Assembly: GCA_964035545.1 (NCBI GenBank)
Contig: OZ037770.1
Coordinates: 8,376,973 to 8,440,972, forward strand
Length of the DNA stretch: 64,000 nucleotides
Reading direction: 5' to 3'
Origin: Bugula neritina
Taxonomy: Eukaryota; Animalia; Bryozoa
Shown: in pieces, positions 48,701 through 51,700 of the stretch
Layout: every line of letters begins with the position of its first letter
Position numbering within the stretch: position 1 is the first letter of the stretch
The notes under the pieces: model-generated
The model's input: the letters and a program-made list of their open reading frames with translations, nothing else
Databases searched by the model: none
Told to the model about the DNA's origin: nothing
Made by a program: the position numbers and the translations under genes

Positions 48701-51700
48701 GTTTATGTTGCAGTTGATCATTCCCGGGTCAAACTGCTTCCTGCAGATGAAGAGGAAGGTTCAGACTATATCAACGCTAACTACATGCCGGTAAGTAGAT
48801 GTACTACTATACTGTAAGTAGATGTACTACTATACTGTAAGTAGATGTACTACTATACTGTAAGTAGATGTACTACTATACTGTAAGTAGATGTACTACT
48901 ATACTGTAAGTAGATGTACTACTATACTGTAAGTAGATGTACTACTATACTGTAAGTATATGTACAGTAGTTAGTATATGATGTAACTATATATCCAATA
49001 ATACTATTATGTAATATATATATATATATATATCCAGTAATACTATTATGTAATATATATATATCCAGTAATAATATTATGTAATATATATATCCAGTAA
49101 TAATATTATGTAATATATATATCCAGTAATAATATTATGTAATATATATATATATAATATCCAGTACTACTATACTGTAAGTATGTGTACAGTAGTTAGT
49201 ATTTGATTGTTACACACACAACAGTAACTGAGAGAAATTATGGCTGAGCGATAGAGATATTTTCTTGTATAAACGAAAATGCTTTTGGCGTCAAACAGAG
49301 AGTTTTCAATATTACATAAATCAGTATTTTATGAGTTACCAATATGTCTGACAATATTCAACTTACAAATTAACTAAGCTTGAAAGTTTGAATAAAACCT
49401 CTTTTCTATTTTTTCAGTTTGGTAGTAAATTTGGAAGATTTTTAGTTCTTGAAAACTTTTGCATGGAAAACAATAGTTTGCTAAAAGATTCTTGTTACAG
49501 ACAAAAGCTCGCCACTTGTCTGCACTGAGTGAAGGCATATTTAATTTAGTTGGACAGTATACACGTAAATCTGTTGTTGATTAGACTGGCATACCCGCCT
49601 TCAGGGAGATAGGCAGCTTCTCATTTTACAACTACACTTTTACTTATAGGGCTACACATCAAAGAGAGAGTACATTGCTACCCAGGGTCCTCTACCAGGA
49701 ACCATTGACCATTTCTGGAGAATGATTTGGGAACAGAATGTCACCATGATAGTTATGTTGACTCAACTTATAGAGAGAGGTAAGTATGTTAACTTATAGA
49801 GAGAGGTAAGTATATTAACTTATAAAAAGAGGTAAGTATGTTAACTTATAGAGAGAGGTAAGTATATTGAATTATAGTGAGAGGTAAGTATATTAACTTA
49901 TAGAGAGATGTAAGTATAATAACTTATAGAGAGATGTAAGTATTTAAGTTTTGAGTTAGTTCCAGAACTCAGCCATTTTACTGACTTTAGTGTCGCTTCA
50001 TTCAACTGTAATGTTTAGGACGAAGAAAGTGTGAACAGTACTGGCCAGAAACCCTAGAAGAACCTGCAGCATATGGTGACTTAGTTGTAACTAAGAGAGC
50101 TGAATCTGTTCTTCCAGAATATACCATCAGAATATTTGATATTCAAATGGTAAGTTCTAGTAGCTTACTGTACATGTATGCATTTGACCTATGCTGTTTT
50201 TATAGAGTTGTATTTTATATAATTTATCACTGCATGATAATGTTTTATGTTATAATCCACATGGGGCAGTTTTTGTTCCAAGTATGTTGTCAATTGGACC
50301 ACATTCATTTAGATGAATATTTAGCTCTATAAGTTGTTCATTTGCCTGTGTATATCTAGCTTGAACTGGGCCTCTTCTACCAAATATTATTTCCTTATAT
50401 GAAGTCTCAAACATTCAATTTCAATATTGTAGATCTGAGTATGATTTTTTACAAACTCAATCTCTGTGGGCATCTAGGCTAAACCATGTATAATCTATAT
50501 GCATATATTATCTAGGTCATCCCAGATCTCATCTACACATACAGATATTATCTAGGTCAACCCAGATCTTATCGACGCATACAGATATTATTTAGGCCAA
50601 CCTAAAATAGATATTAACCATAAAGATTTAATTTTATAATTTACTAAAACACTTGTTTGGCCTTGTTTGTTTGGCCACTATGTAACTACAATGTAGGGGT
50701 GTTAACTGGGTTCAGGTTAGCTGCTGCCTCCATATGTAGTCTTATTCCTGCTGACAGGCTGCCAAGATGAGAGCTGTAATTATGTTTCACTTTACTCACT
50801 GGCCTGACTATGGTTGCCCAGGCACTTGCAGTTCTTTGCTTAGTTTCATCACTGACATTAGAAAGAACCTAAACCAGAAGGCATCAGCCCGAGGCCCCAT
50901 TGTTGTACACTGCAGGTAGAGAATTAGCAGTACGCTGCGGTCCTGCTGCTATCTGACATGCTTGTGGACGGCATGGGGTACTTTTCGAGAAACTATGCAT
51001 GAGTAGATTATGTTGTAGTAGCTAGAACATGTTAATGCTCTATAAGTAACCATTCTCTCCAACATGCCATTCACTGCAAGTCACCAACAAATGTATTCAA
51101 AGTGACTCATCAACCAAAATGACTCACTGTTTCGTGTAACTCATTACTCACTCTTAGTCACCGTGTCTCGCTCTCTGAATCACTCTCTCTCAATAACTCA
51201 TACGCAAAGTCACTCTCCTATTGTGTGCTCAGCTAACCACCCTATGACTAACAGGTATAGTGTCTCACTGGTACACCCCAGTTACTCTTACTCTTCTCAG
51301 GTCTCATCTCTGGTTGTGGTTACTTCGTATCAAGTAATCAGTTCCTCACAGCTACTAGCTGCGTCTTATGTGGCCCCACCGTCGGCGAGCGCATGCTTAG
51401 CTCACTGCTTTAGTTACGGCTTATTGCATGCGCCATTCTTACTTTCAGGGGGAGACAACACGCTCTGTGAAACAATTTTTCGTTTCATTCTGGCCGGACT
51501 TTGGCTGTCCAGATAGAACTGAGAGTCTGCTAAACTTAGTGCGTGTTGTCAGAAGCCATATGCGACCCGAAGGTCGGGGCCCGCTGGTAGTGCACTGCAG
51601 GTATTTCCATTCTTCTACCGTAACTGTGGGCTACAAGTGTCTTACATACTCTGTTCAGTTCAGGGGGTGATAACTGCTAACACTTGTTTATAGACTATGT

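What the first reader, a model, noticed from the sequence alone, without database searches (positions are those of the whole stretch)
50758..51600. Mutually exclusive duplicated exons swap the WPD loop and pre-P-loop segment of the PTP active site
Seen: two homologous exons lie between the ...IFDIQM exon (ends 50149, phase 0) and the SAGVGRTG exon (starts 52285, phase 2). A (50758-50915) reads [12 protein letters not shown]...GPIVVHC; B (51449-51600) reads [12 protein letters not shown]...GPLVVHC. Both are open, have canonical AG/GT sites and share phase 0-2. Joining A+B gives HCR-GRQHAL-stop, and skipping both also reaches a stop within about 13 codons, so only one-of-two is productive. The exons are highly diverged yet both keep WPD-x-G-C-P and GP-x-VVHC, implying an old duplication under selection. 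Established: the WPD Asp is the general acid, the following residue (Phe182 in PTP1B) shapes pTyr and substrate binding, and the Cys of HCSAG is the nucleophile. Inference: one gene makes two catalytically distinct phosphatases by exchanging the active-site module. I do not know of this being described for R3 RPTPs, but I cannot search to confirm novelty.
Basis: partly seen in the sequence, partly recalled or inferred. Interest (0 to 1): 0.92.

Follow-up and report, generated by a model that had tools for sequence, protein, structure and literature searches.

The report
Ancient switchable phosphatase active-site exons
A receptor tyrosine phosphatase gene of a moss animal uses one of two old copies of the exon for its catalytic loop in each messenger RNA; the same pair sits in a brachiopod and an annelid with matching Rbfox-type splicing signals, so these animals have probably kept two versions of the enzyme core for over 500 million years.

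Summary
Confirmed. Exons A (50758-50915) and B (51449-51600) of a Bugula neritina-like Ptp10D/PTPRB-type (R3) receptor phosphatase are mutually exclusive. RNA contigs from four studies join each exon to the downstream exon; none shows A-B or skipping. Both exons encode the last strand before the WPD loop, the loop, helix 3, the S-loop and the catalytic Cys. The pair, in the same order and phase, occurs in four more bryozoan-like lineages, two unidentified animals, Owenia (annelid) and Lingula (brachiopod; RefSeq lists both isoforms). A limpet and a sea spider have one A-like exon. Both exons are under strong purifying selection. New here: all nine lineages carry (U)GCAUG within 110 nt after A and within 90 nt before the next exon, the Rbfox 'activate A, repress B' layout; the genome has an Rbfox gene. 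Correction: catalytic residues are identical and the Tyr/Phe difference after WPD is not conserved. Lasting differences lie in the strand, helix 3 and S-loop, so tuned kinetics or allostery is inferred, not shown. No paper found. The scan noted other active-site exon pairs in this genome, not this one.

The parts
50019..50149 (+). Constitutive upstream exon of the PTP domain, ends in phase 0
   Evidence: RNA contigs; AG at 50017-18 and GT at 50150-51
50758..50915 (+). Alternative exon A (52 codons + 2 nt): strand, WPD loop, helix 3, longer S-loop, strand, His-Cys; ancestral-type copy
   Evidence: (matches PTP1B 168-215)
50971..50975 (+). GCAUG, 56 nt after the A donor (putative Rbfox enhancer of A)
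   Evidence: kept in the second B. neritina assembly
50996..51001 (+). UGCAUG, 81 nt after the A donor (putative Rbfox enhancer of A)
51391..51395 (+). GCAUG, 58 nt before the B acceptor (putative Rbfox silencer of B)
51425..51430 (+). UGCAUG inside the 3' splice-site region of B, 23 nt before the acceptor (putative silencer of B)
   Evidence: 51400-51549 has no change against the second assembly
51449..51600 (+). Alternative exon B (50 codons + 2 nt): same structural unit, shorter S-loop with a fixed Pro; derived, more conserved copy in bryozoans
52285..52420 (+). Constitutive downstream exon: rest of the P-loop (SAGVGRTG) to the start of the Q-loop
52722..52857 (+). Exon with the Q-loop end and the tail YxN motif (Tyr-Glu-Asn at 52830-52838)
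53313..53398 (+). Last coding exon to the stop codon
   Evidence: RNA loose end matches 53313 onward
28361..53398 (+). Host gene (5' end not mapped): FN3 exon array, one transmembrane segment near 46.4 kb, one PTP domain

Best explanation
An exon that carries one structural unit of the PTP domain (PTP1B 168-215: strand, WPD loop, helix 3, S-loop, strand, nucleophile Cys) was duplicated in tandem once, in an early lophotrochozoan Ptp10D/PTPRB-type gene. SHOWN: each mRNA carries A or B; both copies are intact and under purifying selection in bryozoans, a brachiopod and an annelid; double inclusion or skipping shifts the frame to a stop 97-130 nt before the next junction. INFERRED (about 0.75): Rbfox picks the exon. 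Bound just after A it promotes A, and bound in the 3' splice-site region of B it blocks B, so Rbfox-rich cells (nerve or muscle in other animals) make A and other cells make B by default; nonsense-mediated decay removes mistakes. INFERRED (about 0.6): both forms are active Asp/Cys phosphatases that differ in WPD-loop dynamics, allosteric coupling or partner surface rather than in chemistry. Single origin about 0.8.
For: RNA joints in 4 studies. Lingula RefSeq X1/X3 use A and X2 uses B. Tandem pair in Owenia and Lingula, L031, L034 and L038, L039-L044; all end AG|GT with length 2 mod 3. Synonymous sites saturated or nearly so, while dN is 0.05-0.17 for bryozoan B and 0.08-0.56 for bryozoan A. 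The best tree puts all 9 A on one side and all 9 B on the other (54/89). GCATG was the top 5-mer of 1024 in the first four introns (18 vs 5.2) and held in five held-out introns (23 vs 7.1). It lies within 110 nt of the A donor in 9/9 (16 vs 1.9) and within 90 nt of the next acceptor in 9/9 (13 vs 1.6); none lies in the last 90 nt of the flanking introns. Rbfox gene in the genome. Position rule and FGFR2 precedent: PMC2777236. Loop swaps change rate and pH profile in PTP1B: PMC9682893. Both Lingula domains fold as complete PTPs (the A model's nearest structures are PTPRB and PTP10D).
Against: No tissue, cell-type or binding data for Rbfox. Owenia has GCATG near the end of 8 of 28 introns of this gene, so its 3' signal alone is weak. 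Five of the nine lineages are bryozoan-like and not fully independent. The tree has 50 columns and the A/B split is not starred; AU tests on the earlier set could not reject separate origins. No enzyme data; the two predicted folds are alike at this resolution. A changed 5 residues in its first 42 codons between two B. neritina lineages, which fits weaker constraint on A.
Confidence: 0.7

Rival explanations
1. The two forms are biochemically near-equivalent. The pair is kept for splicing-coupled control of expression or as a locked-in arrangement, not for a different enzyme.
For: All catalytic residues are identical. Several relatives manage with one exon, A-like (Patella, L037, Pycnogonum) or B-like (L033). 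The predicted folds are alike.
Against: Copy-specific residues persist across three phyla (His175-equivalent 9/9 in A; Ser190-equivalent and S-loop Pro 9/9 in B; Asp vs Val at 197 in 7/9 vs 8/9), which redundancy does not predict.
Confidence: 0.2
2. Independent duplications in bryozoans, in the annelid and brachiopod lines and in the L034/L038 lineage, converging on the same layout.
For: AU tests did not reject A+B grouped by lineage (p 0.27 and 0.40). The A/B branch has only 54/89 support. The molluscs checked have one exon.
Against: Same order, same length asymmetry (A has the longer S-loop), shared diagnostic residues and the same GCAUG layout in all lineages. Owenia B groups with Lingula B (94/90).
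Confidence: 0.15
3. Exclusivity and choice come from RNA base-pairing (docking site and selector) or steric hindrance, and the GCAUG elements are incidental or bind another protein.
For: GCATGC is palindromic and the window intron also holds 4 CATGC. B and its upstream 50 nt are nearly unchanged between two B. neritina lineages.
Against: No intron-pair stem is above shuffles in more than one lineage. A-B introns are 215-3129 nt with short AG-free zones, so no distant branch point near the A donor. L034 has no CATGC.
Confidence: 0.12
4. One exon switches chemistry, giving a substrate trap or a PTPRQ-like lipid phosphatase.
For: WPD to WPE changes PTPRQ's substrate (PMC5336234). Asp-less or altered copies exist: exon C (WPS) in the paralogs and exon X (WED) in L039/L040.
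Against: A and B both keep WPD in all 18 exons.
Confidence: 0.05
5. One exon is a dead pseudo-exon.
For: The draft assembly GCA_010799875.2 shows a 1-nt deletion in A.
Against: RNA of that same lineage (21 of 21 checked variants shared) lists no indel in A and splices it in 4 studies. A is intact in 8 other lineages.
Confidence: 0.01

Closest known systems
R3 receptor PTPs: Drosophila Ptp10D, vertebrate PTPRB/VE-PTP, PTPRJ, PTPRO, PTPRH
   Same: FN3 ectodomain, one TM, one PTP domain, tail YxN; same exon boundaries around the WPD segment in the invertebrate orthologues checked; the Lingula orthologue's fold is nearest PTPRB and PTP10D.
   Different: Two alternative copies of the WPD-to-Cys exon. 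The R3 evolution paper has no occurrence of 'alternative' or 'mutually' (PMC5336234). Loop reads WPDxGCP; pTyr loop reads KNRW in Bugula.
Rbfox-controlled mutually exclusive exons: FGFR2 IIIb/IIIc, C. elegans egl-15 5A/5B, unc-32 7a/7b, alpha-actinin NM/SM
   Same: Tandem homologous exons with (U)GCAUG sites near them; for FGFR2, Fox-2 activates the upstream exon and represses the downstream one through sites upstream of and within IIIc (PMC2777236; PMC3585155).
   Different: Here the swap is in an enzyme's catalytic core, the layout is kept across three phyla, and regulation is inferred from motifs only.
Mutually exclusive exons at enzyme functional sites (PKM1/2; nine catalytic-site events in Lam et al. 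2021)
   Same: Homologous exon swap within one fold, with variable residues near functional sites (PMC7954323).
   Different: That paper's main text names no phosphatase; the catalytic residues here do not vary.
Engineered WPD-loop chimeras of PTP1B and YopH
   Same: Replacing non-catalytic loop residues changes rate, pH dependence and loop dynamics (PMC9682893).
   Different: Here the swap is natural, larger (about 50 residues including helix 3 and the S-loop) and made by splicing.
PTPRQ
   Same: R3 member whose WPD-loop change alters the substrate (PMC5336234).
   Different: Arose by gene duplication with WPE; A and B both keep WPD.

Membership tests
Mutually exclusive exons from tandem duplication | Homologous neighbouring exons, similar length, same phases | tested here: met
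Mutually exclusive exons from tandem duplication | Each exon spliced to both flanks in RNA | tested here: met
   all four joints seen
Mutually exclusive exons from tandem duplication | No double inclusion or skipping in mRNA | tested here: met
   No such joint in 4 runs (contigs drop rare forms); both routes hit early stops
Mutually exclusive exons from tandem duplication | Both copies under selection | tested here: met
   synonymous sites saturated or nearly so, low dN
R3 receptor PTP (Ptp10D/PTPRB type) | FN3-repeat ectodomain and one transmembrane segment | tested here: met
   (fn3 and PTP_tm in the B. neritina orthologue); 5' end not mapped
R3 receptor PTP (Ptp10D/PTPRB type) | Single cytoplasmic PTP domain | tested here: met
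   One domain, then a short tail and stop at 53398
R3 receptor PTP (Ptp10D/PTPRB type) | Tail YxN motif | tested here: met
   52830-52838; feature per PMC5336234
Active classical PTP | WPD Asp, HCSAGxGR Cys and Arg, Q-loop Gln | tested here: met
   Present in both forms
Active classical PTP | Measured pTyr phosphatase activity | not testable with these tools
   Needs recombinant domains
Rbfox-regulated exon pair | Conserved (U)GCAUG downstream of the activated exon and upstream of the repressed exon | tested here: met
Rbfox-regulated exon pair | Rbfox gene present | tested here: met
   G000:C1:17140236(-); only Rbfox-family hits in PDB
Rbfox-regulated exon pair | Binding and dependence on Rbfox; tissue-specific choice | not testable with these tools
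   Only whole-sample contigs were available
Docking-site/selector (Dscam-type) exon cluster | Conserved complementary intron elements | tested here: not met
   (simple ungapped stem test)
PTPRQ-type lipid phosphatase | WPE loop, no tail YxN | tested here: not met
   WPD in both exons and YxN present

The most novel reading that the evidence does not exclude
The first natural case of a protein tyrosine phosphatase whose whole WPD-loop and helix-3 module is exchanged by cell-type-specific, Rbfox-driven splicing, kept since the Cambrian in bryozoans, brachiopods and annelids. One receptor gets two catalytic or allosteric settings, and some lineages later add Asp-less third copies or keep a single type per gene.
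Probability: 0.45. Interest if true: 0.85.

Novelty: new variant of a known kind. Interest (0 to 1): 0.72.

Why it matters
WPD-loop dynamics set turnover and allostery in PTPs, and this is studied mostly with engineered chimeras. Here are at least nine natural A/B pairs in otherwise identical domains, selected for a very long time: a ready test set for which second-shell residues tune a phosphatase. It also gives a deeply conserved candidate Rbfox target in lophotrochozoans, and it marks a gap in gene models (the Owenia protein found uses B only; the draft Bugula model breaks here). The splicing principle itself is known, and the functional difference is still unmeasured.

Tried and rejected
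1) Tyr/Phe after WPD as the key switch: not conserved. 2) A as a pseudo-exon: the deletion in the draft assembly is absent from RNA of the same lineage. 3) Long-range RNA stems and steric hindrance: no support. 4) A decayed exon C inside the window's introns: not above shuffles. 5) C orthologous to exon X of L039/L040: not shown; both fall on the B side but are not sisters. 6) Naming the animals behind L031, L033-L035, L038-L045: failed; only L038's sample was traced, to a wastewater-treatment reactor metagenome. 8) The homologue search with the whole Octopus PTP region was swamped by two-domain PTPs. 9) Contig depth was not used as an expression measure. 10) Literature: five searches for such exons in PTPs gave nothing relevant; the gene list of the human tandem-exon catalogue and the fly catalogue were not available.

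Full report
Observation. They are 40% identical in protein and 55% in DNA. Both match Pfam Y_phosphatase positions 130-176 and PTP1B residues 168-215. In a local frame test either exon alone gives an open frame; A+B stops at 51468-51470 and skipping stops at 52321-52323. These stops lie 130 and 97 nt before the next junction, so both products should be NMD targets (established rule, my knowledge).

RNA. Contigs of four runs from four studies were laid on 49955-52880. A->downstream and B->downstream joints appear in all four. Upstream->A and upstream->B are listed as joints in one run and as loose ends with upstream-exon letters in others. There is no A->B and no skip joint. Contigs drop rare forms, so this shows that both are used, not that errors never occur. 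Depth figures for A and B were 84/193, 537/1294, 79/105 and 75/183, but contig depth cannot rank expression. The RNA comes from the lineage of the assembly GCA_010799875.2 (21 of 21 checked variants shared). That assembly has a 1-nt deletion in A that the RNA does not show, so I take it as an assembly error.

Organism and gene. The near-identical protein is KAF6030557.1 of Bugula neritina; the window is a diverged lineage of that bryozoan (inference). The gene has an FN3 exon array, one transmembrane segment, one PTP domain and a tail YxN motif, the features of R3 receptor PTPs (PMC5336234). Orthologues are named Ptp10D, PTPRB or RPTP-eta in the databases and share the loop WPDxGCP.

Spread and age. 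The same two exons, same order and phase, sit between the same flanking exons in Owenia fusiformis (annelid) and Lingula anatina (brachiopod), in bryozoan-like lineages L031, L039/40, L041 and L042-44 (some contigs are too short to show both flanks), and in two unidentified animals L034 and L038. Lingula RefSeq isoforms X1 and X3 use A and X2 uses B, so both forms already stand in an automatic annotation. Patella, a second gastropod-like contig and the sea spider Pycnogonum have a single A-like exon; L033 has a single B-like exon. Between lineages synonymous sites are saturated or nearly so, while dN is 0.05-0.17 for bryozoan B and 0.08-0.56 for bryozoan A. The best tree separates all nine A (with the mollusc and arthropod exons) from all nine B, support 54/89 on 50 columns; earlier AU tests could not reject separate origins. 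One duplication before these three phyla split, over 500 million years ago by my knowledge of their fossil record, is the simplest reading, with A closest to the ancestral exon.

How the choice is probably made. GCATG was the most enriched of all 1024 five-mers in the first four A-B introns (18 vs 5.2 expected; other introns 15 vs 18). It held in five introns found later (23 vs 7.1). In all nine lineages it lies within 110 nt after the A donor (16 vs 1.9) and within 90 nt before the next acceptor (13 vs 1.6), in seven of them 10-24 nt from the AG; the last 90 nt of the flanking introns have none. Background in other introns of four orthologous genes is 7% and 14%, higher in Owenia. Fox-1/Rbfox proteins enhance an exon from downstream and repress it from upstream, and act this way on FGFR2 IIIb/IIIc (PMC2777236). 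The genome has an Rbfox gene. So I infer: Rbfox present gives A, absent gives B, with NMD as proofreader. I found no conserved stems and no sign of steric hindrance. Binding and tissue pattern are not shown.

What the swap does to the protein. AlphaFold models of the natural Lingula A and B domains are both complete PTP folds (pTM 0.86 and 0.85); the exon covers one strand, the WPD loop, helix 3, the S-loop and the strand to the Cys. The nearest solved structures of the A model are PTPRB and PTP10D. W, P, D, G, P, the helix-3 Arg, P, H and C are invariant in all 18 exons. Lasting differences, in PTP1B numbering by alignment: 175 His in all A vs mostly Phe or Asn in B; 190 Ser in all B; 194 Phe in all A vs Leu in 7 B; 197 Asp in 7 A vs Val in 8 B; and a longer S-loop in A vs a short loop with a fixed Pro in B. 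These flank the loop and cover helix 3, which couples to it in PTP1B (my knowledge). Swapping non-catalytic WPD-loop residues changes rate and pH profile in PTP1B (PMC9682893). I therefore expect two active enzymes with different tuning or partners; this is inference.

A third exon type. Eight recent paralogs lie upstream on the minus strand (C6:8.02-8.35 Mb). Their flanking exons are 91-94% identical to this gene, yet each carries one different exon, C (about 60% to B, 49% to A; dS to B 1.3 against 0.08-0.22 in the flanks), without the general-acid Asp. At least one paralog is spliced in RNA (loose ends match the paralog acceptor). One relative has three exons, A-X-B, with X reading WED. Whether C is a lost third exon or an old paralog with converted flanks is unresolved.

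Novelty and limits. Five full-text searches found no description of such exons in a PTP; the main texts of a worm survey and a human/fly survey of such exons name no phosphatase. Subscription journals are not covered. The mechanism class is known, and the scan has noted several other active-site exon pairs in this genome, so I rate it a new variant of a known kind.

Noticed in passing
G000:C6:8021636-8344886 (-), loci L017-L021, L023, L025, L026; the nearest copy starts head-to-head in window 1-5900 (-): Eight recent paralogs each carry one old, Asp-less exon type C (WPS; SLS in L025) instead of A/B. Two have also lost the P-loop Arg, and dN/dS among C copies is 0.2-1.1. Candidate pseudophosphatases or decaying copies; at least one is spliced.
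   Followed up: partly
L039:2707-2852 and L040:1706-1851: A relative has a third tandem exon X between A and B, with intact splice sites and phase, a WED loop, and GCATG 17 nt before its acceptor; there the X-B intron has no GCATG.
   Followed up: partly
window 48362-48643: The pTyr-recognition loop reads KNRW instead of KNRY, as also in the second Bugula assembly and Limulus; this may change pocket depth in both isoforms.
   Followed up: no
window 49765-49947; L017-L023 and L007-L015 after the WPD exon: Splice donors are tandemly amplified into minisatellites (26-nt unit here; other units after the His-Cys donor in paralogs), each unit holding a donor-like sequence.
   Followed up: no
window 50916-51448: RNA contigs cover the A-B intron in all four runs, and in one run it is the only intron covered, which fits a lingering splicing intermediate. 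Contig depth is weak evidence.
   Followed up: no
window 51400-51600 vs L032: Only 1 change in 200 nt across exon B and its upstream 50 nt, against roughly 5-15% per 50-nt bin in the introns: extra constraint at the RNA level.
   Followed up: partly
L033:10040-10191 and protein P0014: An unidentified lineage keeps a single B-like exon with WND in place of WPD.
   Followed up: no
L120:14592-14726 and 15162-15296: The Lingula assembly shows the SAGVGRTG exon twice with identical translation next to an N; probably an assembly duplicate.
   Followed up: no
G000:C1:3.96-4.23 Mb (+), loci L004, L007-L011, L014, L015: A second tandem cluster of at least eight near-identical PTP genes; no second WPD exon was seen within 1.5 kb of any.
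   Followed up: no
window 29478-39690: Array of near-identical FN3 exons in the ectodomain, mirrored in the head-to-head paralog.
   Followed up: no
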